64,000 nucleotides of DNA from Iphione sp. A-MEVVRFRX5. Taxonomy: Eukaryota. A program made the position numbers and the translations under genes. Positions 3,111 to 62,507 of the stretch are shown piece after piece. The DNA lies in assembly GCA_976226885.1 (NCBI GenBank), contig OZ320322.1:64852001-64916000 (forward strand). Direction: 5' to 3'. Under the pieces are notes generated by a model that was given only the letters and a program-made list of their open reading frames with translations, ran no database searches and had not been told where the DNA came from. Positions within the stretch are counted from its first letter, which is position 1, and every line of letters begins with the position of its first letter.

Positions 3111-3226
3111 TGTAGAGAAAGGAGCAGATCTGAGCTGGTGGTAAACAGGAAGTGCTTTATTGAACCTCTAAGTAAGGAGAGGTACAGAATTCAATATGGC
3201 AGCAGTAAACATCGCGATCGTCTACA
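3111..3226 (-). repeat. 3' LTR of the Gypsy element
   Basis: TGTAGA...TCTACA; matches 7997-8112 except one A/G; AATAAA on the minus strand. Confidence 0.97.
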
Positions 3227-3240
3227 TCTCCCTTTTTTTT
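3227..3240 (-). other. Polypurine tract
   Basis: AAAAAAAAGGGAGA on the minus strand, directly abutting the 3' LTR. Confidence 0.9.
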
Positions 3241-7996: not shown

Positions 7997-8112
7997 TGTA
8001 GAGAAAGGAGCAGATCTGAGCTGGTGGTAAACAGGAAGTGCTTTATTGAACCTCTAAGTAAGGAGAGGTACAGAATTCAATATGGCGGCAGTAAACATCG
8101 CGATCGTCTACA
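7997..8112 (-). repeat. 5' LTR of the Gypsy element
   Basis: 116-bp direct repeat of 3111-3226. Confidence 0.97.
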
Positions 8113-9279
8113 TAATTAATGTGAAATACATGTATATTAAACCTGAAATAATGCTCATCAAACGGTAGCAAACACGGGGGAGAGCAACCGGGCCAGACGC
8201 AAGCCAACAGGTGTCGGCCGGGGTACAAGCCCATCAAATGGTGGTAGAGTATACCTTTGAGTTTAACAAACTTGGGGGAGAGCGACCAGGCTCGTTGTCA
8301 GCTCACTGAGGTGCGAGCTCATCAAACAGCAGCATAACCCTTTGATTTTAAAGAAAATCGGCGAAACTCAGCCAAATTCGTCCAAAAATGAGCAGAAATC
8401 GTCAAAGTTCATGCAAAAATCGGCAAAACTCAGCCAAATTCATCCAAAAATGGGCAAAAATCGTCCAAATTCGTTCGGATTTCGGATTGAATCATTCGGT
8501 TATATGTCTGAATAGAGAAAAATGTTTGTTTCCCAGAAATATTGGGACTAGTCTAGTTTAGCGGCCTACCCCCGAATTCAAGATGGTGGCCGTGACGTAC
8601 TCAAGGGGGTTTGGGGGCGAAGCCACTAGGTGAAGCCCCCAAAATTTAGAGAAATGAATAAGAAATTAGGGTTAGTGTTGGCTTTAAAAATCAAAAAAAG
8701 GGTTAGGGTTAGGGATAGTGTTAGCATTTTACCATTAAATGGATTTAAAATGAAGATAAAAGGCTGTTGTCATTGTCAACGTCATGAAAAAGGGGTTCCG
8801 GTTGCGCCTTCACGAAGACATGGCGGCCCAAAAGCTCGGCTAAAGAAAATCGGCCTCCTCGGCGGGTTAGAGGGCCTTTTTCCACTTTATTTGCTATGGA
8901 GATTCTAGTTAAATGACCATGGAATCCGAAATAGAGCCCACGAAGACCAGCCTCAACGCACACACAGCATAGATCGCAGCAATGTCCACCGACTTTTCAA
9001 CTTTCCCGCACCTGGGGTGCTGTTTCCGGTTCCAGGCCACGCCTGCGCACACAGATTTTATTGCATCACTTCCGCCCTGCTCGACATTTCTGAACCACGA
9101 GGAAGCTGCAGCCTAAACTCAAGATGTTGAGCACTCTACGCTCCTCCCGACAAACATGAGGAGATTCAAACTCGCGCCATCCGTCATCGAGGCCTAACTA
9201 CCCATCTGACCATGCTTATTCACTCCTCCAGGCTAGGCACTTTGATGACTTCGATGAAGACGAAGGAATTGACGAGCCG

Positions 9280-10785
9280 ATGGACTTCCAAGCTCAGACG
9301 CTGAAAAAAACGCGCGACCAGGCCACGCTTCCCAACTCTCCTGCCTCCTCTCAACAAGCCAAGAAAGCTCTTACCTTCAATGAAAACCCAAAGACTCCTG
9401 TGAAGCAAACCAAAAAGCCTAAACACCCAACTCCTCAAGGAACCCCGACACGCCCAGTACTGGACGATATCCCGGAACATGAAGCTGCCCCTCCGCAGGA
9501 TCCAGCCGCCAACAATGACCTGGCCGCCATTACCAACAAGATCTCAGTTCTCTGGCAAAAGTCGAGCGACCATGACGCAAGTATCAATAAGGTTTCTGCC
9601 TCTCTTGCCATATGTGAATCTAAAATTGATGTTTGCGAGGAATTCATTGATGAACATGACCGTCAAATCTTTAGCACCAACTGCGACTTACAATCTCTTA
9701 GCAAAAGAGTTGATGTTCACAGGGAGCTCGCTTTAACGCAGGAAAAATTTGATAGACGCCTGAACTTAATTTTTGATGGCCTGGAGGAAGACCAGGATGA
9801 ACAGGCTGACCACTTAAGAAAGCGTTTAGAGTGCCTATTTGCTGACGCCCTTAATTTAGCCCATATTAGACTAGATGTCACCCACAGATTGGGAAACCCA
9901 AGAGGCAGGACCAGAGCAACTATTGCACGTTTTCGTACACTTAGGGAAAGACACAAGGTCTGGTACAGACATTCTATGCTGAAGGATTATAGAAGGGAAA
10001 CTGTCTGGATCAGGGAAGACCTTCCCACTGAACATCACGACCGACTCGAGATCCTCAACCGTATTGCCTGCATAGCTAAGAGATCGGAGCAGTTTCCAAG
10101 TGTTCCAATCAAAAATTTCATGCTCTACTTGGGCAACGAACAATTCGACCACCAGAACTGGAATGACCTACCCCGATTCCTCAGACCCGCGACCCTCGCC
10201 ACTATAGAGACAAGGGACTCTTACGTTTTTGCCGGCCCGGAGCACCCCTTCTCTCTTGAACACCCGTACAACCTAATGATGACACATGGGAACTTCCAGT
10301 CAGTTCTACAGTATCTTGTTCTCACATACGCTATTGAGAAGAGGCAATCAGGAGTTGTCAACAAAGCCGTCCGTCCTGAAAGCCACAGGCAGTTATTCCA
10401 GCAGCTATACATTCTTCGCACTGCAGAACCAGATGACGATCTTGAAAGAGACATCCTTATCCCAGCCCTAGAGCACAGGTTCAAGTCGGACGTATCTACC
10501 CACAAGCGCCTTAGAATGACCGGTAAGAAGAGGATCGGCTGGGCGACGATCAACAGGAAGTGGGGAACGGGTCTCCCCTTCTCACATTCCGATGTTGCTG
10601 TCCCTTCCAGTTGGATTGGAGATAACTGGTACGGCCGCATTCTAATGGATCTTCGTGACAATCTTCCACTCGACAACCCTGCCGCTGAGGAGGTCCAGCC
10701 GCCCCCCCAGTCTTCAACCCAACCTACTCAACCGGCTCCACAGCCGGTAACTCCACCAGCTACGACACCGCAACCTTCACAGTAA
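9280..10785 (+). CDS. L1-type ORF1p (coiled coil + RRM/CTD) with a C-terminal NADAR/YbiA-like domain, 501 aa
   Basis: Heptad-rich region followed by L1 ORF1 motifs RRLNLIFDGLEE, HRLG, TIARF, WIREDL. The C-terminal ~150 aa follow the NADAR pattern (F.G...PFS, ALEHRF, L.MTG...I, WGTGL, W.GDNWYGRILMDLRDNL). The frame extends upstream to an ATG at 9124, interrupted by TGA at 9157. Confidence 0.85.
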   Translation: MDFQAQTLKKTRDQATLPNSPASSQQAKKALTFNENPKTPVKQTKKPKHPTPQGTPTRPVLDDIPEHEAAPPQDPAANNDLAAITNKISVLWQKSSDHDASINKVSASLAICESKIDVCEEFIDEHDRQIFSTNCDLQSLSKRVDVHRELALTQEKFDRRLNLIFDGLEEDQDEQADHLRKRLECLFADALNLAHIRLDVTHRLGNPRGRTRATIARFRTLRERHKVWYRHSMLKDYRRETVWIREDLPTEHHDRLEILNRIACIAKRSEQFPSVPIKNFMLYLGNEQFDHQNWNDLPRFLRPATLATIETRDSYVFAGPEHPFSLEHPYNLMMTHGNFQSVLQYLVLTYAIEKRQSGVVNKAVRPESHRQLFQQLYILRTAEPDDDLERDILIPALEHRFKSDVSTHKRLRMTGKKRIGWATINRKWGTGLPFSHSDVAVPSSWIGDNWYGRILMDLRDNLPLDNPAAEEVQPPPQSSTQPTQPAPQPVTPPATTPQPSQ

Positions 10786-22594: not shown

Positions 22595-25500
22595 GTAAGA
22601 GCTCCCCTTTATCTCACCTTACAGGAGACCCGGGCGGTCTGTCTGCCTCCGAACCACTGAGAGCTCCACTTTATCTCACCTCTCAGGAGACTAGTGTGGT
22701 CTGTCTACCTCTGAACCACTGGGAGCTCCCCTTTAATCTCACCTCTCAGGAGACCTGGGCGGTCTGACTGTCACCAAACCACTGAGAGCTCCCCTTTATC
22801 TCACCTCTCAGGAGACCCGTGCAGTCTCTCTGCTTCTGAACCAGTAGCAGACACTAGATGAACCTTTCTCCTAATTCTAGTGAAAGAATCATGATTTCCT
22901 GAAGAGAATGAAGCTGATTCGAAAAACTAAAATGAAAATCCCTAAACATTTGACTAAATGTCCTGTAATGGTTAAAACAAGGACCCGTCCGTCATGCTGT
23001 CGTCTTGAGTGGGTTATGAGTTGTGTTTTGGTGGAGGAGACTTGGTCTGTGCCCCAGGCAGGCCTGTCCCACAGCCGCCAGTCGGAGCAGCTCTACCAAC
23101 ATTGCATCTATTGACCGTCAGTCTAGATATTGTTGTAGTAATAACTTCATGTATTATTAATCTAGCTCTTTCATATTAGAAGAAGATTGTCCATTATCGG
23201 CATGTCTGCGGTATGGTTGAGGCGATCTACATGGTTACACCCTTCTTAACTGTCCTACGACCAATCAACCACCTCGATGGTGCAGGAAAGAAAACAGAAA
23301 AAAAATCATCGTGAAGAAAGTTTAGAAATTTGTTCTGCGAAGTTCACTAAACGGGAAATAACTTTGGAATAAACTACATGTAGTCCCTAGCTACTCTGAG
23401 TTGTCCATGTCCTGTAATTACCTCTCCTAATGACCTTGCATGCTACCACCTGTAACTCATCTACCTTCACCAAGTACCCCACATGCTACCCCCTGTAACT
23501 CATCTACCTTTACCAAGTACCCTGCACGCTACCACCTGTAACTCATCTACCTTTACCAAGTACCCGTCATGCTACCCCCTGTAACTCATCTTCCTTTTTT
23601 TTTTTTTTTTTAAACTTTTATTTTCCCTGGCGTAAAATACAGCCAGGCCATAACAACATAAAAATGATACATTTCATAATATTTAGAAACAATGTCACAA
23701 ATCTATTTTCTTTACATATATGTGTATCCCTCACTGTTAGTGGGATATCCAATAGAATCTTGATCCAATATTATATATCAAATATTAAATTGCAGTTTTC
23801 CAAATTTGAGAGAGTATGAGGTTGTTATATCACATATATAAATAATAGGTGTGTGTACGAATCTTATGTGAATTTATTATAATGTCGCTAAGTAAATTGG
23901 TAATCTCATTTGAACTATCCATTTTTATGGCACCATCCAATTCTCCTTCAACTTTTTATTCAGTAACATATATTTTAACCGATTCTTAAATTTTGTTGGT
24001 ATTAGTTGTTTAAGGTTTTTGTCGAGTGCTTTCCAGGTACTAATACTATGATAACTCGGGCTATATTTATATGTCATTGTCTGTGGTAGTGGTAAATTGA
24101 TTTGGGGGTTTCTGGTACGAGTTTGATTAACCGATTGCAATTTTAATAATGTTCTATAATTAAGCGTTAGAGTAAAATATTGATTACGCTCCTTTAGACC
24201 CATTATAGAGAATCTCTGTAATAAAAAGCTCACATCTGTAGTATAATCCCTTGTCGCTATTCTTAGAGCCTTGTCTAATTGTTTCTCTAGTCTTTTGAAT
24301 AAAGGACTCGTATAGTTTGATAGTAATGCAATCCCATAATCCAAAATCGGAATAAAAAAAGACTGAATTAATTGAATAGTTGCATTTATATTGCTTTTTA
24401 GCCTAACTTGTCTTAGTAAATTTAACATTGAATAAGTTCTATTTAGTTTATTTTCTAACTCTAGGTTGAAATTCAGCTTAGTATCCAATGTAATGCCTAA
24501 ATATTTGAAAGAAGATAATTGCTTTAGTTGTACACCGTTTAATACTAAATTTAAATTCACATCTTTGTATTTGTTTCTTGTTGTCGAGAACAACATTGTG
24601 ACTGTTTTGGCTACATTCACTACTATACCATTAATTTTGTACCACTCAGCTATTTGATCCAAGTCATTCTGTAACTTCTCCATTATTGTATTAGGGTTTT
24701 CTCCTTTGATAAACAGTACTGTATCATCTGCATACATAATGCTTTCACAACTCGTATAGTAGCTAATGCTGTCATTGATGAACACCAAGTACCCCACATG
24801 CTACCCCCTGTAACTCATCTACCTTTACCAAGTGCCCCACATGCTACCCCCTGTAACTCATAGACCTTCACCAAGTACCTGTCATGCTACCCCCTGTAAC
24901 TCATAGACCTTCACCAAGTATCAGTCATGCTACCCCCTGCAACTCATAGACCTTCACCAAGTACCCTGCATGCTACCCCCTGCAACTCATCTACCTTCAC
25001 CAAGTGCCCAACATGCTACCCCCTGTAACTCATAAACCTTCACCAAGTACCCGTCATGCTACCCCCTGTAACACATAAACCTTCACCAAGTACCCGTCAT
25101 GCTACCCCCTGTAACTCATAGACCTTTACCAAGTACCCCACACGCTACCCCCTGTAACTCATAGACCTTCACCAAGTATCAGTCATGCTACCCCCTGTAA
25201 CTCATCTACCTTTACCAAATACCCCACACGCTAGCACCTATAGCTCATCCAACTTTCTTATGTATCCCACATGCTACCATCTGCCAACTGCCAGCCCACC
25301 TACCACCCTGTTCCTCATCCCACCTACCACCCTCTCCCTCACCCCACCTACCACCCTCTCCCTCACCCCACCCACCACCCTCTCCCTCACCTCACCTACC
25401 ACCCTCTCCCACACCCCACCTACCACCCTTTCCCACCTTCTACCTTCCACCCTCTCCCTCACCCTACCTACCACCCTCTCCCTCACCCTACCTACCACCC

Positions 25501-28500
25501 TCTCCCTCACCCCACCTACCACCCTCTCTCTCACCCCACCCACCACCCTCTCCCTCACCCCACCTATGACCCTCTCCCTCACCCTACCTACCACCCTCTC
25601 CCTCACCTCACCTACCACCCTCTCCCACACCCCACCTACCACCCTTTCCCACCTTCTACCGTCCACCCTCTCCCTCACCCTACCTACCACCCTCTCCCTC
25701 ACCCCACCTACCACCCTCTCTCTCACCCCACCCACCACTCTCTCCCTCAGCCCTCTCCCTCACCCTACCTACCACCCTCTCCCTCACCCCACCTACCACC
25801 CTCTCCCTCACCCCACCTACCACCCTCTCTCTCACCCCACCTACCACCCTCTCCATCACCTACCACCCTCACCCTCACCCTGCCTACCACCCTTTCCCAC
25901 CTTCTACCTTCCACCCTCTCCCTCACCCCACCTACCACCCTCTCTCTCACCCCACCCACCACCCTCTCCCTCACCCTACCTACCACCCTCTCCCTAACCC
26001 TGCCTACCACCCTCTCCCTCACCCTACCTACCACCCTCTCCCTAACCCTGCCTACCACCCTCTCCCTCACCCCACCTTCCACCCTCTCCCACACCCCACC
26101 TACCACCCTCTCCCTCAGCCCTCTCCCTCACCCCATCTACCACCCTCTCCCTCACCCCACCTACCACCCTCTCCCTCACCCTACCTACCACCCTCTTCCT
26201 CACCCCACCTACCACCCTCTCCCACACCCCACCTACCACCCTCTCCCTCACCCCACCTACCACCCTCTCCATCACCCCACCCACCACCCTCTCTCTCACC
26301 CCACCCACCACTCTCTCCCTCAGCGCTCTCCCTCACCCTGCCTACCACCCTCTCCCTCACCCCACCCATCACCCTCTCCCACACCCCACCTACCAACCTC
26401 TCCCTCAACCCTCTCCCTCACCCCACCTACCACCCTCTCCCTCACCCCACCTACCAACCTCTCCCTCAACCCTCTCCCTCACTCCACCTACCACCCTCTC
26501 CCTCACCCCACCTACCACCCTCTCCCACACCCCACCAACCACCCTCTCTCTCACCCCACCCACCACTCTCTCCCTCAGCCCTCTCCCTCACCCTACCTAC
26601 CACCCTCTTCCTCACCCCACCTACCACCCTCTCCCTCACCCTACCTACCACCCTCTTCCTCACCCCACCTACCACCCTCTCCCTCACCCCACCTACCACC
26701 CTTTCCCACCTTCTATCTTCCACCCTCTCCCTCACCCTACCTACCACCCTCTCCCTAACCCCACCTACCACCCTCTCCCTCACCCCACCCATCACCCTCT
26801 CCCACACCCCACCTATCACCCTCTCCCTCACCCCACCTTCCACCCTCTCCCTCACCCCGCCTACCACCCTCTCCCTCACCCTGCCTACCACCCTCTCCCT
26901 CACCCCACCTACCACCCTTTCCCACCTTCTACCTTCCTCCCTCTCCGTCACCCTACCTACCACCCTTGCCCTCACAGATGATCACCTCATGGTCAGCCTC
27001 ACATCCCGCCTACCAGCTGCTGTTTCTGCGTTTGATGCCTCCAAGGAACCTCCAGTGTGTTGTGATAAACTGCAACCTAACTTCTTATTTCATTTACAGC
27101 GCTTTGTTAATGAAGATCATCTCAGCGTTCACAAGATGAAGCACGAAATGTCATTGACGCTCACTCCGGGAACGCGGTTGGCAGGCAGCCTTGTGGCTGG
27201 TAAGACTTGTGTGATCCTCTCTTTAGTACTGAGAACATGTCTAATAGATATTATTTTCACACTGCCTTATATTTATGCCTTGAACATGGACCGCCCCCAG
27301 ACATGACCAATTTTTTTTAGGACTGTTACTGTGATCTTTAATCTGTGATCTTTGTTGTTATTTATTCCAGCTGTTATTGGACTTTTTCCAGATGTTAACT
27401 ATTTATCCAGGACTTTTTATTGAAGTTGTTACCACTTTGTGATTCATCTACATAATTTATTATTACTATCAATTACCTCCACCAATCAACATTCATCCAA
27501 GACTTAACTGCAGAACTGTTCTGGTCTAGGCCCCTCCTGATTGGTTACCAAGTTAATAAACATAGCAACTGTTTAGTATAAAAGCCAGTTGATGACAACC
27601 GTTGCCTCACATGTTCACCTGATGAAGTGGTGGACACACCACGAAAGCTTGTGATTGTTAACATGTCTAACCATTATAAATAAAGCCAAGAACTGTTCAA
27701 TTTAGGGTTTCTAGTATCTTTATTCATCAGTTTTCACGTCTAACAGATGTACGAAGTTCTATGTAACTCATTATATTCAGTGATGCGGATTGTAGCTCAT
27801 ATATATCTTTCTATAGTATTTTACCAACAGCATCTCTTATCCAGGTATACTACCATGCAGTGCATTAAATGTAGGGAAATTACATGTAATGGATGTTTGA
27901 CACTAATCTGGAACCCACCTTCCTACCACAAGTTTTGGATTTATGTGACAGTAAGGTGTATAGAAGTGTTCATTTTTATGAAGACCTGGCTTAAGTGATG
28001 TCCCATTTTATGGCTTGAGGGCCCCTCTCAGGAATTCTGGTTGTACATTCAGCCTGTCTCTTATGTTGTGTGAGTATATATAAGCCCTTCTTGGGGATTC
28101 CACATGTACATACAAGCCCATCTCTTAGTTGGTGTCAGAGAATAGGAGCCCTTCTCACAGATTCCACATGTACAAACAAGCCCGTCTCTTACGTGGTGTC
28201 AGAGAATAGGAGCCCTTCTCACAGATTCCACATGTACAAACATGCCCGTCTCTTAGTTGGTGTCAGTAAATAGGAGCCCTTCTCACAGAATCCACATGTA
28301 CATACACGTCCATCTCTTAGTTGGTGTCAGTAAATAGGAGCCCTTCTCACAGAATCCACATGTACATACACACCCGTCTCTTATGTGGTGTCAGAGAATA
28401 GGAGCCCTTCTCACAGATTCCACATGTACATACACGCCCGTCTCTTATGTGATGTCAGCTGGTCCTTTGTTTTCTATTTTGGATATTGTAATGTGTGTGT

Positions 28501-59600: not shown

Positions 59601-62507
59601 GTACAATGTAATCATCTGAACGTGGCATAGGTTGCCAGCAGGAGGTAAAACTCAAGCGCCGGCATGGCTGCTAGACTCCTCACAGGGGGGCAAACTCAAC
59701 AATCATCAGCTTCTCTGCTTTTAGCTGGAAATACAGAAGTCCACAGACACCAGTCAACAACAACCCCCTCCCCTGCACAATGCACGCTAGCCAACAGACA
59801 CCAGTCAACACCCATCGCTTCTTTACTGAATGTACAAACTGCCTGATCGGATGTAACTTGCAGAAAATTCTGACCTATGGACCCATTACATCTGGCGAGA
59901 GCCTAAGGCCCGATCGTGCCTCAAGGATCCCTACACACCACTCAAATTCTATCCATGTAAACTAATGAACATCAGTGGGTACAGCCTTATTTTTGTAGGA
60001 TGTATCACATCAGGGGGATCCCAAACCCACTTTAAAAAAGTCAACAAAGTAGTAGTAAGCTGTCTCCACTCTACATGCACCACATCTCTACATGCACCAC
60101 ACCTCTACATACACCACACCTCTACATATACCAGACCTCCACATGCACCACACCTCTACATGCACCACACCTCTACACACACCACAACTCTACATGCACC
60201 ACACCTCTACATACACCACACCTCTACATGCACCACACCTCTACACACACCACAACTCTACATATACCACACCTCTACATGCACCACACCTCTACATGCA
60301 CCACACCTCTACACACACCACAACTCTACATGCACCACACCTCTACATGCACCATACCTCTACATGTGGCATACCTCTACATACACCACATCTCTACATA
60401 CACCACACCTCTACATGCACCACACCTCTACATGCACCACACCTCTACATGCACCACACCTCTACATGCACCACACCTCTACATACACCACACCTCTACA
60501 TACACCACACCTCTACATATACCAGACCTCCACACACATCACACCTCTACATGTACCATATCTCCACATGCACCACACCTCTACATGCACCACACCTCTA
60601 CATGCACCATATCTCTAAATACACCATACCTCTCCATACACCATACCTCTACATACTCCACACCTCTACACGCACCACACCAATACACACATCACACCTC
60701 TACATGGACCATATCTCTGCATACACCACACCTCCACATATACCACATCTCTACATACACCACATCTCCACACACATCACACCTCTACATATACCACATC
60801 TCTACATACACCACACCTCTACATACACCATATCTCTACATGCACCAAACCTCTACATACACCACACCTCTACATGCACCATATCTCTACATGCACCAAA
60901 CCTCTACATACACCACATCTCTACATACACCACACCTCTACATGCACCACACCTCTACATGTACCATATCTCTACATGCACCACACCTCTACATACACCA
61001 CACCTCTACATACACCACACCTCTACATGCACCACACCTCTACATGTACCATATCTCTACATGCACCACACCTCTACATACACCATACCTCTACATGCGG
61101 CATACCTCTACATGCACCATATCTCTACACACACCACACCTACACACACACCACACCTACACACACACCACACCTCTACATACTCCACACCTCTACATGC
61201 ACCACACCTCTATATACACCACACCTCTACACACACCACACCTACACACACACCACACCTCTACATACACCACACGTCTGTGTGGAAAAATTCCTGTATG
61301 CATGGAAAGCCGGCCTTACGGCCCAGGGCTGCTTTTGGCCCACAGACCCGGACCACAGACCCAGGTCCATGGAAAGCACTCAGGCAGAATGCCTAAGATC
61401 ATTTATTTCTGTACCTCCGCTGCCCTGTTCTGGAGACCATTTCCAGATGCATGGAAAGCCAACCTAATAGCCCACTCGGACATTCCCGCAAGGGTCCACA
61501 ATAAGGATAACTGGGCCTTAGTGGCATCCTATGGAGAGAGAATGAGCTCAGGATATGTAACAGGGCGCCCAAGTATGAGTGTAATATTTGACATACAGAA
61601 ATATGTTAATATTTGTACTCACGATATGTTCATATCTTCTCTTTTTCGATATGTCTATGATAATCCATCAAGTGTATGAGTTGCGATGTCGCTAGTTACA
61701 AAAGTGATATATTACTAGTTTATGAATACACGAAGCAAAATTCATTTGAGCACTAGGCCTACGAGTTTAACTATAATATAAAGTCGATCGAGTTTTCTTA
61801 GTCTATTATTTGTCAGCATTTCAGCCTCAACGAAAGTATTAAGAAAAGATATACCATTCAAGAAAGTGTTATTACAAAAAAAAAGTATTATAACTAAAAA
61901 TTATAGCCAGGTTAACTGTTCCATTCCCTACAAAGCCGATGTGCCATCAGTAGTAATTAGTTAACTTATACATTAGAATGCTTGGTGACTGTGAGTGTGA
62001 GGCTCGACTCTACTACACACTACCAGCTCTAGACTAGACTATATAGACCACAGACTGAGTCACTCGCTGGCTCAGGTGTTTAACAGCTCTCTACTTTAGA
62101 GTTACGCACGTAAAACCACACGCGCTAAACGGCCGAGCCCGAGCCAAGCAAAACCTCAGTCACATCGACTTCAGAGCAGCAGACAATACTTGGAAGGACC
62201 TCTTCACCTAACATGGTCCTTCTATACCTGTAGTACACAAGCTCCTCTGCTTGCAGGGTGCCTGGGCCAGTGACGTCACAGGCGTCACTGTCTGCCTGTC
62301 AAGTCCCACTAAATGTAAACATGGAGCTGTCATGTTCTTCACAGCCAGACAGCTCGTTCAATGTACACAGCAGCGTCAGATAACAGATGATCCATAAAAG
62401 TACACACCTATATGTGTCTCCTCGATGTGTTGAATTAGCTCTCCAAGGGTGGTAAAAGTGAGTCCGCAGCCATTAAATTTACAGTTGTTCAGCAAGAACA
62501 CCGCCAT
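55739..62507 (-). CDS. JAZF1: JAZF1 (juxtaposed with another zinc finger 1), 6 exons, 344 aa
   Basis: complement join(62507-62408,59513-59441,58775-58675,57694-57598,56802-56674,56273-55739) = 1035 nt; GT-AG introns with compatible phases. Motifs CKFNGCGLTF...HIEETH, DPRLLEKQELQQP, DSDDSWT, EKPFACPVPGCKKRYKNVNGIKYHAK, FKCKCGKSYKTAQGLR. Confidence 0.96.
56568..56613. repeat. (CT)n microsatellite
   Basis: Pure dinucleotide run in a JAZF1 intron. Confidence 0.95.
56674..56802 (-). CDS. JAZF1: JAZF1 exon 5 (second zinc finger)
   Basis: EKPFACPVPGCKKRYKNVNGIKYHAKHGH. Confidence 0.96.
57382..57604 (-). repeat. 65-bp minisatellite containing the JAZF1 exon 4 donor, 4 copies
   Basis: CTCAG|GTCAGAATGAC on the minus strand, with GT at 57597, 57532, 57467 and 57405. 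Confidence 0.9.
57598..57694 (-). CDS. JAZF1: JAZF1 exon 4 (acidic, GSEFDEDE...DSDDSWT)
   Basis: Matches GSEYDEEE...SDSDESWT of JAZF1. Confidence 0.93.
58050..58545. repeat. 111-bp minisatellite, ~4.5 copies
   Basis: GATATGTATGCAGATATG at 58075, 58186 and 58297. Confidence 0.9.
58675..58775 (-). CDS. JAZF1: JAZF1 exon 3 (RFFTDAAKKE...LRSTTPT)
   Basis: Matches RFMTDAARRE and FRSSTPT of JAZF1. Confidence 0.92.
59227..59364. other. Assembly gap (138 N)
   Basis: Run of N within JAZF1 intron 2. Confidence 1.
59441..59513 (-). CDS. JAZF1: JAZF1 exon 2 (DSDPRLLEKQELQQPPSLALSYVLR)
   Basis: Matches DTDPRVLEKQELQQPTYVALSY. Confidence 0.95.
60070..61275. repeat. 18-bp minisatellite (CTCTACATGCACCACACC), ~65 copies
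   Basis: 1.2-kb tandem array in JAZF1 intron 1. Confidence 0.95.
62271..62278. promoter_or_regulatory. Full CRE palindrome TGACGTCA in JAZF1 intron 1
   Basis: Exact 8-mer, ~130 bp from exon 1; function untested. Confidence 0.35.
62408..62507 (-). CDS. JAZF1: JAZF1 exon 1 (first zinc finger)
   Basis: MAVFLLNNCKFNGCGLTFTTLGELIQHIEETHI; CAAATGG start context; G|GTGTGT donor. Confidence 0.95.

What the first reader, a model, noticed from the sequence alone, without database searches (positions are those of the whole stretch)
10200..10680. NADAR/YbiA-like domain fused to the C-terminus of an L1 ORF1 protein, with apparent loss of catalytic residues
Seen: after the coiled coil and RRM/CTD, ORF1p continues VFAGPEHPFSLEHP...FQSVLQYL...ALEHRFKS...LRMTGKKRIGWATINRKWGTGLP...WIGDNWYGRILMDLRDNL. 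Established: the NADAR family (E. coli YbiA, DUF1768) has the pattern F...FSNF...SEHYFQAQK...ALRAKF...LLATG...LVEAS..D..WG.G...G.N.LG.LLMELR..L and comprises N-glycosidases, including enzymes that remove ADP-ribose from guanine in DNA. Known accessory ORF1 domains include esterase, PHD and CCHC; I do not recall NADAR being described there. Inference: structural residues are kept but the polar ones are replaced (EH->LQ, K->Y, E->W, D->N), suggesting a pseudo-enzyme reused for nucleic-acid or ADP-ribose binding, possibly a decoy against host PARP/ART defence.
Basis: partly seen in the sequence, partly recalled or inferred. Interest (0 to 1): 0.85.

Follow-up and report, generated by a model that had tools for sequence, protein, structure and literature searches.

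The report
LINE ORF1 with dead NADAR domain
A nearly intact jumping gene (an L1-type LINE) encodes an RNA-packaging protein that really does end in a NADAR-fold domain. The fusion is shared by a very large LINE family and was mentioned once in a 2025 paper, but this lineage has lost the residues that bind and cut ADP-ribose, so it is an interesting variant and not a new kind of system.

Summary
ORF1 (9280-10785, 501 aa, intact) is made of a disordered N-terminus, a coiled coil, an RRM and a CTD as in human L1 ORF1p, then a NADAR-fold domain (residues 312-462, nt 10213-10665) and a Pro/Gln-rich tail. An APE/RT ORF2 with two frame breaks follows.

- **Fusion:** it is not private to this copy. 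An exhaustive search found 1318 protein clusters, and most cover RRM-CTD plus NADAR in one stretch. All 76 aligned relatives pass Pfam NADAR.
- **Active site:** 126 of about 150 relatives keep the full polar signature N-E-K/R-K-Q-E. The window has L-L-Y-R-S-W. The equivalents of the Phytophthora NADAR residues E43, K50, K75, W89 and E125 are all lost.
- **Timing of the loss:** the window keeps 16/16 invariant RRM-CTD columns, so the loss arose in a living lineage and not by decay of this copy. Its NADAR branch is 2.8 times faster than its RRM-CTD branch.
"pseudo-enzyme" is supported. "ADP-ribose binder or decoy" is not, because the ADP-ribose contacts are gone too.
- **Prior art:** Genome Biol 2025;26:320 mentions ORF1-NADAR in oyster Tx1 LINEs. 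This scan has noted the same fusion many times on other DNA of this genome, including dead-NADAR lineages.
- **Not testable here:** selection on the dead domain, because no sister copies could be reached.

The parts
9280..10785 (+). ORF1, 501 codons plus stop, uninterrupted
   Evidence: the only copy in the window
9280..9594 (+). ORF1p N-terminal region (residues 1-105), poorly conserved and Pro/Gln/Thr-rich, probably disordered
   Evidence: no conserved columns in A1; no Pfam hit; disorder is inferred from composition
9598..9753 (+). coiled-coil helix (residues 107-158)
   Evidence: AF2 helix 2-53 of model m6de80c9e6316; aligned to the coiled coil of human L1 ORF1p 2yko/2ykp
9757..10017 (+). 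L1 ORF1p-type RRM (residues 160-246)
   Evidence: profile A3 vs 2yko/2ykp 3.4e-10 and 2w7a 5e-7; Foldseek TM 0.70-0.73; the window keeps 16/16 invariant RRM-CTD columns
10018..10194 (+). L1 ORF1p-type C-terminal domain (CTD, residues 247-305)
10213..10665 (+). NADAR (YbiA-like) fold domain, residues 312-462, with the active-site signature replaced (L326, L343, Y350, F373, R400, S403, W421; the conserved Trp equivalent to W89 is deleted)
10666..10782 (+). Pro/Gln/Thr-rich C-terminal tail (residues 463-501); most relatives lack it and end within a few residues of the NADAR domain
   Evidence: hit coordinates against protein lengths
11037..11420 (+). ORF2 piece 1: N-terminal part of the apurinic-type endonuclease
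   Evidence: Pfam Exo_endo_phos 7.7e-8; tblastn to the ORF2 of L001
11452..13083 (+). ORF2 piece 2 (other frame): rest of the endonuclease plus the first part of the reverse transcriptase. The first frame break lies between 11417 and 11452
13034..14824 (+). ORF2 piece 3 (third frame): rest of the RT (YADD kept) and the C-terminal zinc-binding region. The second frame break lies in a run of C at about 13066-13072

Best explanation
The window holds a nearly full-length L1-superfamily (L1/Tx1-type) LINE.

**Architecture.** Its ORF1 protein has the classic L1 ORF1p core: a trimerising coiled coil, an RRM and a CTD. This core packages the element's RNA. A C-terminal NADAR-fold domain follows it.

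**The family.** The fusion is ancestral to a very large LINE family. In most members the NADAR active site is intact. By analogy with characterised NADARs, the domain there probably acts as an N-glycosidase that removes ADP-ribose from guanine or cytosine bases of the element's RNA or cDNA. This step is inferred.

**The window's lineage.** This is a long branch nested inside that family. Here the catalytic Glu, the phosphate-binding Lys, the YbiA-type Glu and further ADP-ribose contacts were replaced, mostly by hydrophobic or aromatic residues (L, Y, F, W). Fold-determining residues were kept.

**Conclusion.** The domain is most likely catalytically dead and unable to bind ADP-ribose in the canonical way. 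It most likely survives as a folded, non-enzymatic appendage of the ORF1p trimer. It could serve as an extra nucleic-acid or protein contact in the RNP, or it could be slowly on its way out.

**Shown:** the architecture, the fold, family membership by homology, loss of the active-site residues, and that the loss is derived and lineage-level.

**Inferred:** inactivity, and any remaining function.
For: **Architecture**
- ORFs and Pfam.
- The L1 ORF1p core by profile (3.4e-10) and by fold (TM 0.73).
- The NADAR fold by Pfam (E 1e-7), by family profile against 8bau (4e-30) and by Foldseek (TM 0.75, with no other fold matched).

**Family**
- 1318 clusters at E<=1e-3 and 451 at <=1e-10, mostly spanning query residues 150-462 in one stretch.
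- 77/77 aligned members hit Pfam NADAR.
- The sister locus L001 has ORF1-NADAR followed by an APE/RT ORF2.

**Active site**
- 126 of about 150 relatives have the complete signature N-E-K/R-K-Q-E. About 20 lack one residue. The window lacks all six.
- These columns map onto the ligand contacts of 8BAU through the profile alignment and the paper.

**The loss is derived and lineage-level**
- The window is sister to P0001, which has an intact signature (support 0.87). It sits inside an 87-tip clade (support 0.98).
- It keeps 16/16 invariant RRM-CTD columns but only 13/20 invariant NADAR columns (Fisher p=0.011).
- Its NADAR terminal branch is 2.38 substitutions per site against 0.85 for RRM-CTD. 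The ratio is 2.8, against a family median of 1.0.
- ORF2 has only two frame breaks and keeps YADD.

**Some constraint remains**
- The C-terminal third of the domain (W428 to L462) keeps 8 of 10 conserved columns.
- The 160-codon domain is open. A neutral substitution-only simulation at 35% amino-acid change leaves 6% of sequences stop-free.
Against: - No second copy of this sub-lineage could be reached. Nothing came from the sequencing-run look-ups, the metagenome scan, the rest of the window or the protein library, whose best hit is 27-31% identical. Purifying selection on the dead domain is therefore not measured here.
- The open-frame argument is weak (p about 0.06).
- The AlphaFold model is driven by the family alignment, so it does not prove that this diverged sequence still folds.
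- The enrichment of losses at known ADP-ribose contacts, compared with other conserved NADAR columns, is not significant on its own (p=0.22).
- Inactivity is inferred from residues and not assayed. E88A in E. coli C7 NADAR had only a minor effect in vitro (PMC11543638).
Confidence: 0.75

Rival explanations
1. Functionless relic. After catalysis was lost, the NADAR domain has no role in this lineage. It is only slowly eroding, and the retained residues reflect too little time rather than selection.
For: - The NADAR branch is about three times faster than the RRM-CTD branch and is the longest of 145 tips.
- 7 of 20 invariant columns are lost.
- Losses are not significantly concentrated on known ligand contacts (p=0.22).
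- A stop codon here would still leave a canonical L1 ORF1p, so the domain may be dispensable.
Against: - Because a truncation would be tolerated, an unselected 160-codon tail should have been cut by stops or indels over a branch of more than 2 substitutions per site, yet it is open.
- Retention follows family conservation: 65% of columns conserved at >=90% are kept, against 36% of columns conserved at 70-90%.
- Unchecked notes from this scan report conserved dead-NADAR lineages elsewhere in this genome.
Confidence: 0.3
2. Rewired enzyme. The pocket was rebuilt with new polar residues (H322, E327/H328, E398/H399, R400), and the domain still catalyses a reaction, perhaps on a different substrate.
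For: - The window has His at two positions next to the active-site motifs where the family has Ser (65/76) and Ala (57/76).
- NADAR subfamilies are known to swap the catalytic acid: Asp in BC4488 and DarT1-associated NADARs, His in phage NADARs (PMC11543638).
Against: - Three acidic or basic key residues are replaced by L, Y and W, and the pyrophosphate contacts K75 and W89 are lost.
- No relative shares the new residues, so nothing shows that they are conserved.
- Model coordinates could not be inspected to see whether the new His and Glu residues cluster.
Confidence: 0.08
3. One reading: a dead NADAR kept as an ADP-ribose or ADP-ribosylated nucleic-acid binder, a reader or decoy against host PARP/ART defence.
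For: - The fold is retained.
- W428 (the W133 equivalent) and the WGxG motif are retained.
- Dead enzymes that keep binding are common in other families (general knowledge).
Against: - The residues that bind the ADP-ribose pyrophosphate and adenine in 8BAU (K50, K75, W89) are lost, not only the catalytic ones.
- The net charge of the domain (+1) is ordinary for the family (mean +1.0).
Confidence: 0.07
4. Private decay. The changes are post-insertion mutations of this one dead copy, whose master element had an intact NADAR.
For: ORF2 is broken in two places, so the copy is not mobile as it stands.
Against: - All 16 invariant RRM-CTD columns, the RT YADD and the rest of ORF2 are preserved. There are only two frame breaks in 3.8 kb, one of them in a homopolymer.
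- Seven hits on 20 invariant NADAR columns with none on 16 RRM-CTD columns is not what random decay gives (p=0.011).
Confidence: 0.03

Closest known systems
ORF1-NADAR proteins of Tx1-type LINEs (Crassostrea gigas Repbase families), mentioned in Genome Biol 2025;26:320 (PMC12477816)
   Same: An L1/Tx1-type LINE whose ORF1 protein carries a YbiA-family NADAR domain. The same architecture is seen in at least 1318 protein clusters and in locus L001, with an APE/RT ORF2 downstream.
   Different: The paper gives one sentence and a supplementary alignment, with no analysis of active sites. The window's lineage has lost the active-site signature that 126 of about 150 relatives keep. It is only 27-31% identical to the nearest library member.
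Phytophthora nicotianae NADAR (PDB 8BAU) and E. coli YbiA (PDB 2B3W): N-glycosidases, including ADP-ribosyl-guanine/cytosine hydrolases (PMC11543638, PMC12945103)
   Same: The same fold (TM 0.75 and 0.65). The family profile matches at 4e-30 and 1e-20. The FxxxxxxxSN, AKF and WGxG...GxNxLGxxLMxxR framework is shared.
   Different: The domain is fused behind an RNA-binding ORF1p instead of standing alone. In the window E43, K50, K75, W89 and E125 (P. nicotianae numbering) are L, Y, F, deleted and W.
Human LINE-1 ORF1p (PDB 2YKO/2YKP/2YKQ, 2W7A, 2LDY)
   Same: Coiled coil, RRM and CTD in the same order (profile E 3.4e-10, TM 0.70-0.73), encoded upstream of an APE/RT ORF2.
   Different: Human ORF1p ends after the CTD. 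Here a 150-residue NADAR domain and a Pro/Gln-rich tail follow. Pfam Transposase_22 does not detect the window protein.
Other accessory domains in LINE ORF1 proteins (esterase in CR1/L2-type, PHD and CCHC in the Jockey superfamily; PMC3905857, PMC4120745)
   Same: An enzyme-like or binding module added to the RNA-packaging ORF1 protein of a non-LTR retrotransposon.
   Different: A different fold and chemistry. NADAR is not part of the published ORF1 type classification in those papers (titles and abstracts listed; full texts not read).
Gypsy LTR retrotransposons of Ectocarpus with an N-terminal NADAR in Pol (PMC12477816)
   Same: An independent capture of a YbiA-family NADAR domain by a retrotransposon.
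   Different: An LTR element with the domain in Pol, in a brown alga. It was probably acquired from bacteria and is described as highly conserved.

Membership tests
NADAR superfamily (Pfam PF08719, YbiA-like) | Significant match to the family profile | tested here: met
   The window alone scores E 1.7e-7 to 8.5e-8 but 32-33 bits, just under the 35.1-bit gathering score. Its homologues (phmmer E down to 1.8e-35) all pass, 77/77 with a best E of 1.9e-43. The domain profile hits 8bau at 4e-30 and 2b3w at 1e-20.
NADAR superfamily (Pfam PF08719, YbiA-like) | YbiA-like alpha-helical core fold with flanking small beta sheets | tested here: met
   AF2 model with pLDDT 93.6. Foldseek against the PDB finds only 8bau (TM 0.75, E 2e-8) and 2b3w (TM 0.65). 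Caveat: the model rests on the family alignment.
NADAR superfamily (Pfam PF08719, YbiA-like) | Conserved Glu that coordinates the distal ribose (E43 in P. nicotianae, E88 in E. coli C7) | tested here: not met
   The window has L343. The family has E in 74/76.
NADAR superfamily (Pfam PF08719, YbiA-like) | Essential phosphate-binding Lys (K50 in P. nicotianae, K95 in E. coli C7; Arg tolerated in vitro) | tested here: not met
   The window has Y350. The family has K or R in 73/76.
NADAR superfamily (Pfam PF08719, YbiA-like) | YbiA-subfamily Glu (E125 in P. nicotianae) in the G-E-A-S motif | tested here: not met
   The window has W421. The family has E in 73/76.
NADAR superfamily (Pfam PF08719, YbiA-like) | N-glycosidase or ADP-ribosyl-base hydrolase activity | not testable with these tools
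   Needs an enzyme assay. The residue pattern predicts no canonical activity.
L1-type ORF1p (type II ORF1: coiled coil + RRM + CTD) | Coiled coil, RRM and CTD in this order | tested here: met
   Profile A3 against 2yko/2ykp at 3.4e-10, plus 2ldy and 2w7a. AF2 pLDDT 96.7 and Foldseek TM 0.70-0.73 to the human ORF1p trimer chains.
L1-type ORF1p (type II ORF1: coiled coil + RRM + CTD) | Match to Pfam Transposase_22 (PF02994) | tested here: not met
   No hit at E<=1 for the window. Only 1 of 77 family members hits it. The model is too mammal-centred to decide membership.
L1-type ORF1p (type II ORF1: coiled coil + RRM + CTD) | Encoded just upstream of an APE + RT ORF2 on the same strand | tested here: met
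   ORF2 starts 250 nt downstream and has Exo_endo_phos, RVT_1 and zf-RVT. The layout is the same in L001.
Tx1 clade of the L1 superfamily | RT phylogeny placing the element with Tx1, and target-specific insertion | not tested
   No reference RT set was at hand. The only hints are that the published ORF1-NADAR cases are Tx1 and that this copy lies inside a TIR-bounded repeat.

The most novel reading that the evidence does not exclude
A LINE lineage has turned an ancestral ADP-ribose-removing NADAR enzyme on its ORF1 protein into a selected, non-catalytic module. The pocket is refilled with Leu, Tyr, Phe and Trp. The module would have a new job in RNP assembly, nucleic-acid handling or interference with a host factor. 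This would be a natural enzyme/pseudo-enzyme pair within one retrotransposon family, and it could be used to work out what NADAR does for LINEs.
Probability: 0.35. Interest if true: 0.6.

Novelty: new variant of a known kind. Interest (0 to 1): 0.45.

Why it matters
ORF1-NADAR LINEs form a very large family (at least 1318 clusters at 50% identity). In the literature I could search they have one sentence and no experiment. NADAR enzymes are now known to strip ADP-ribose from G and C in DNA and RNA. Their conserved presence on a retrotransposon's RNA-coating protein therefore suggests that ADP-ribosylation of nucleic acids matters for LINE biology in invertebrates.

A lineage that lost the chemistry but kept the fold is a natural control. 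Comparing it with catalytically intact sisters could show whether the domain's benefit is enzymatic.

There is also a practical point. The "metazoan NADARs" counted as host genes in NADAR surveys (PMC11125620) may partly be LINE ORF1 proteins. This is my inference from the size of the family.

Tried and rejected
1. The search for homologous proteins with the whole ORF1 found nothing. This was a limit of the word index and not absence, because exhaustive phmmer then found 1318 clusters.
2. Two look-ups for sequencing runs, one with ORF1 and one with a 10-kb stretch beside the element, listed none. I could therefore not lay reads, and I got no expression data and no view of paralogous copies.
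3. A metagenome contig scan with window-specific peptides found no relative.
4. tblastn and a family-HMM search of the six-frame translation found no second ORF1-NADAR copy in the window. dN/dS could therefore not be computed.
5. The search of earlier findings by sequence was blank.
6. I looked for the third (SGNH esterase) ORF that the scan notes report for related LINEs. It is absent here: the ORF1-ORF2 spacer is 250 nt and holds no ORF of 80 aa or more.
7. Private decay of this copy is rejected on the 16/16 against 13/20 contrast.
8. A Fisher test of polar against non-polar invariant columns was only suggestive (p=0.06). The test of known ADP-ribose contacts against other conserved columns was not significant (p=0.22). 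I do not claim that the active site was specifically targeted.
9. The model coordinates are not readable from scripts, so I could not check whether the new His and Glu residues cluster in the pocket.
Full report
**1. What is there**

The + strand carries an uninterrupted ORF of 501 codons at 9280-10785. 250 nt further on come three overlapping ORF pieces: 11037-11420, about 11452-13083, and 13034-14824. Pfam finds an apurinic-type endonuclease, a reverse transcriptase and a C-terminal zinc-binding region in those pieces. This is a two-ORF, APE-type LINE.

ORF2 is broken by two frame changes and has no other stops.
- One lies between 11417 and 11452.
- The other lies in a run of C at about 13066-13072. 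Real slippage and assembly error are both common at such a place.

It is the only copy in the window.

**2. The ORF1 core is L1-type**

Pfam Transposase_22 does not see it. A profile of residues 106-305 with 89 relatives (A3) hits the human LINE-1 ORF1p structures:
- 2yko/2ykp at E 3.4e-10
- 2ldy at 1.3e-7
- 2w7a at 5.3e-7

The AlphaFold model (pLDDT 96.7) shows a 52-residue helix followed by an RRM and a CTD. It superposes on the human ORF1p trimer chains with TM 0.70-0.73.

**3. The C-terminal domain is NADAR**

The window protein alone matches PF08719 at E 1.7e-7 (8.5e-8 for the domain alone). The score is 32-33 bits, just under the gathering score of 35.1.

An exhaustive phmmer search of 1.84 billion representatives with residues 1-470 gave 1318 clusters at E<=1e-3 and 451 at <=1e-10. 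The best is 1.8e-35. Nearly all cover query residues about 150-462 in a single stretch, so they share RRM-CTD plus NADAR.

Further support:
- All 77 members of alignment A1 hit Pfam NADAR, the best at 1.9e-43.
- A profile of the domain (A2) hits the two solved YbiA-like structures: 8bau at 4e-30 and 2b3w at 1e-20.
- The model of residues 306-467 (pLDDT 93.6) matches only those two entries in the PDB, at TM 0.75 and 0.65. The next hit has E>2.
- The nearest relative's contig (L001) shows ORF1-NADAR followed by an APE/RT ORF2.

The domain is real and the fusion is old and widespread.

**4. The active site**

The profile alignment to 8bau and the residue roles in Schuller et al. 2023 (PMC11543638) let me map the family columns. 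Chain numbering is the paper's numbering plus 2.

| P. nicotianae residue | Role | LINE family | Window |
|---|---|---|---|
| E43 | distal ribose | E in 74/76 | L343 |
| K50 | phosphate and adenine; essential | K or R in 73/76 | Y350 |
| K75 | near the pyrophosphate | K, about 80% | F373 |
| W89 | pyrophosphate | W, 99% | deleted |
| E125 | YbiA-type catalytic Glu | E in 73/76 | W421 |
| D130 | water-mediated contact | D or N | N425 |
| W133 | pyrophosphate | W, 91% | W428, kept |

Three further near-invariant polar columns are also changed: N326L, K400R and Q403S.

Over about 150 relatives, 126 have the whole six-residue signature N-E-K/R-K-Q-E and about 20 miss one position. Only two others miss three or four: P0119, and P0124, which is a multi-NADAR protein. 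The window misses all six.

**5. Private decay or lineage?**

- The window keeps 16 of 16 RRM-CTD columns that are at least 90% conserved, but only 13 of 20 such NADAR columns (Fisher p=0.011).
- Its identity to relatives is ordinary in RRM-CTD (28%, against 30% among family pairs). It is low in NADAR (24% against 36%).
- In a maximum-likelihood tree the window is nested inside the family. It is sister to P0001/P0153, which have an intact signature (support 0.87), within an 87-tip clade (support 0.98). It has the longest terminal branch of 145 tips.
- With the topology fixed, that branch is 0.85 substitutions per site for RRM-CTD and 2.38 for NADAR. The ratio is 2.8, against a family median of 1.0.
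- ORF2 has only two frame breaks and keeps its motifs.

The changes therefore accumulated in a transposing lineage and not in this dead copy. The sister element is itself remote: 28% identity in ORF1 and 31% in ORF2. The branch is long, and nothing closer exists in the libraries I could reach.

**6. Is the dead domain still wanted?**

Here I can only argue indirectly.
- A stop in this C-terminal domain would leave a canonical ORF1p. Yet 160 codons stay open over a long branch. A substitution-only neutral simulation gives 6% stop-free sequences at 35% amino-acid change, and indels would lower this further.
- Retention follows family conservation: 65% of the columns conserved at >=90% are kept, against 36% of those conserved at 70-90%. 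The C-terminal WGxG...GxNxxGxxLxxxR framework is almost untouched.

Against this:
- The domain evolves about three times faster than the rest.
- The losses are not significantly concentrated on known ligand contacts (p=0.22).
- I could find no sister copies.

Unchecked notes of this scan say that other pieces of the same genome hold dead-NADAR lineages that are conserved (s1-317800, s1-349292, s1-349294, s1-320263). I treat these as leads only.

**7. Mechanism**

For the family, I infer that an intact NADAR on the RNA-coating protein probably removes ADP-ribose from G or C bases of the LINE RNA, cDNA or target DNA. This rests on three observations from the literature:
- Characterised NADARs from all four subfamilies remove ADP-ribose from G and C bases of DNA and RNA (PMC12945103).
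- ADP-ribosyltransferases that modify guanine in DNA include Pierisin-1 and CARP-1 as well as bacterial enzymes (table in PMC12945103).
- Pierisin-1 comes from the cabbage butterfly (PMC11209040, listed).

For the window's lineage, canonical catalysis and canonical ADP-ribose binding are both unlikely, because the acid, base and phosphate contacts are replaced by Leu, Tyr, Phe and Trp. The most likely state is a folded, non-enzymatic appendage of the ORF1p trimer, and a relic is the main alternative. The domain's net charge (+1) is ordinary for the family.

**8. Prior knowledge**

In the searchable literature only one paper links NADAR to LINE ORF1. This is the Ectocarpus transposon paper, Genome Biol 2025;26:320 (PMC12477816). 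[quoted passage not shown] It gives no active-site analysis and no dead variants.

The NADAR biochemistry papers list metazoan NADARs without mentioning transposons.

Within this scan the same fusion has been noted very often on other DNA of this genome: 235 notes mention NADAR. These include three-ORF relatives with a separate SGNH esterase gene, which this element lacks.

An ESM Atlas feature search points to eukaryotic, mostly annelid, NADAR clusters with a top score of 0.91. This is a lead only.

**9. Verdict**

The fusion is a known but barely described kind, and the catalytically dead state is a new variant of it. Interest is moderate. The family is large and untested, which makes it attractive. 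This particular copy adds a broken element of a diverged dead-NADAR lineage, and its selection status could not be measured here.

Noticed in passing
window 8548-8575 and 15990-16015: The LINE lies between two inverted copies of a motif of about 23 bases (gtctagtttagcggcctaccccc and its reverse complement). TTAGGG-like repeats sit just inside the left copy, at about 8690-8725. The element therefore appears to be nested in a TIR-bounded repeat, as first-reader note s1-317981 says. A-rich runs at 15933-15943 and 15972-15984 may mark the 3' end of the LINE.
   Followed up: partly
window 8001-8113 and 3115-3227: A 113-base stretch just upstream of the element recurs 4.9 kb away at 99% identity. 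It is probably another interspersed repeat.
   Followed up: no
window 13066-13072: The second ORF2 frame break sits in a homopolymer of C inside the conserved RT motif. It could be an assembly error and not a real mutation, in which case the copy would have a single break.
   Followed up: partly
window 10666-10782: The ORF1p of this element ends in a 39-residue Pro/Gln/Thr-rich tail after the NADAR domain. Most relatives stop within a few residues of the domain.
   Followed up: no
proteins P0028 (1075 aa) and P0124 (870 aa), ENA contigs of 12-13 kb: Two library proteins match the window's NADAR domain in 4-5 separate stretches, so they carry tandem NADAR domains. P0124's aligned copy also lacks most of the signature (N-Q-E-R-Q-C).
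   Followed up: no
L001:3069-3407: The sister element has an extra 112-aa ORF between ORF1-NADAR and ORF2. It has no Pfam hit and no counterpart in the window. It may relate to the third ORF reported in the scan notes for related LINEs.
   Followed up: partly
window 24001-28000 and 60001-62000: Very strong negative GC skew (-0.55 to -0.62) over several kilobases. This suggests strand-biased simple or satellite repeats.
   Followed up: no
literature (PMC11125620, PMC12945103): Surveys of 'metazoan NADARs' treat them as host genes. Given at least 1318 ORF1-NADAR clusters, some of those database entries may be LINE ORF1 proteins. This is an inference and was not checked.
   Followed up: no
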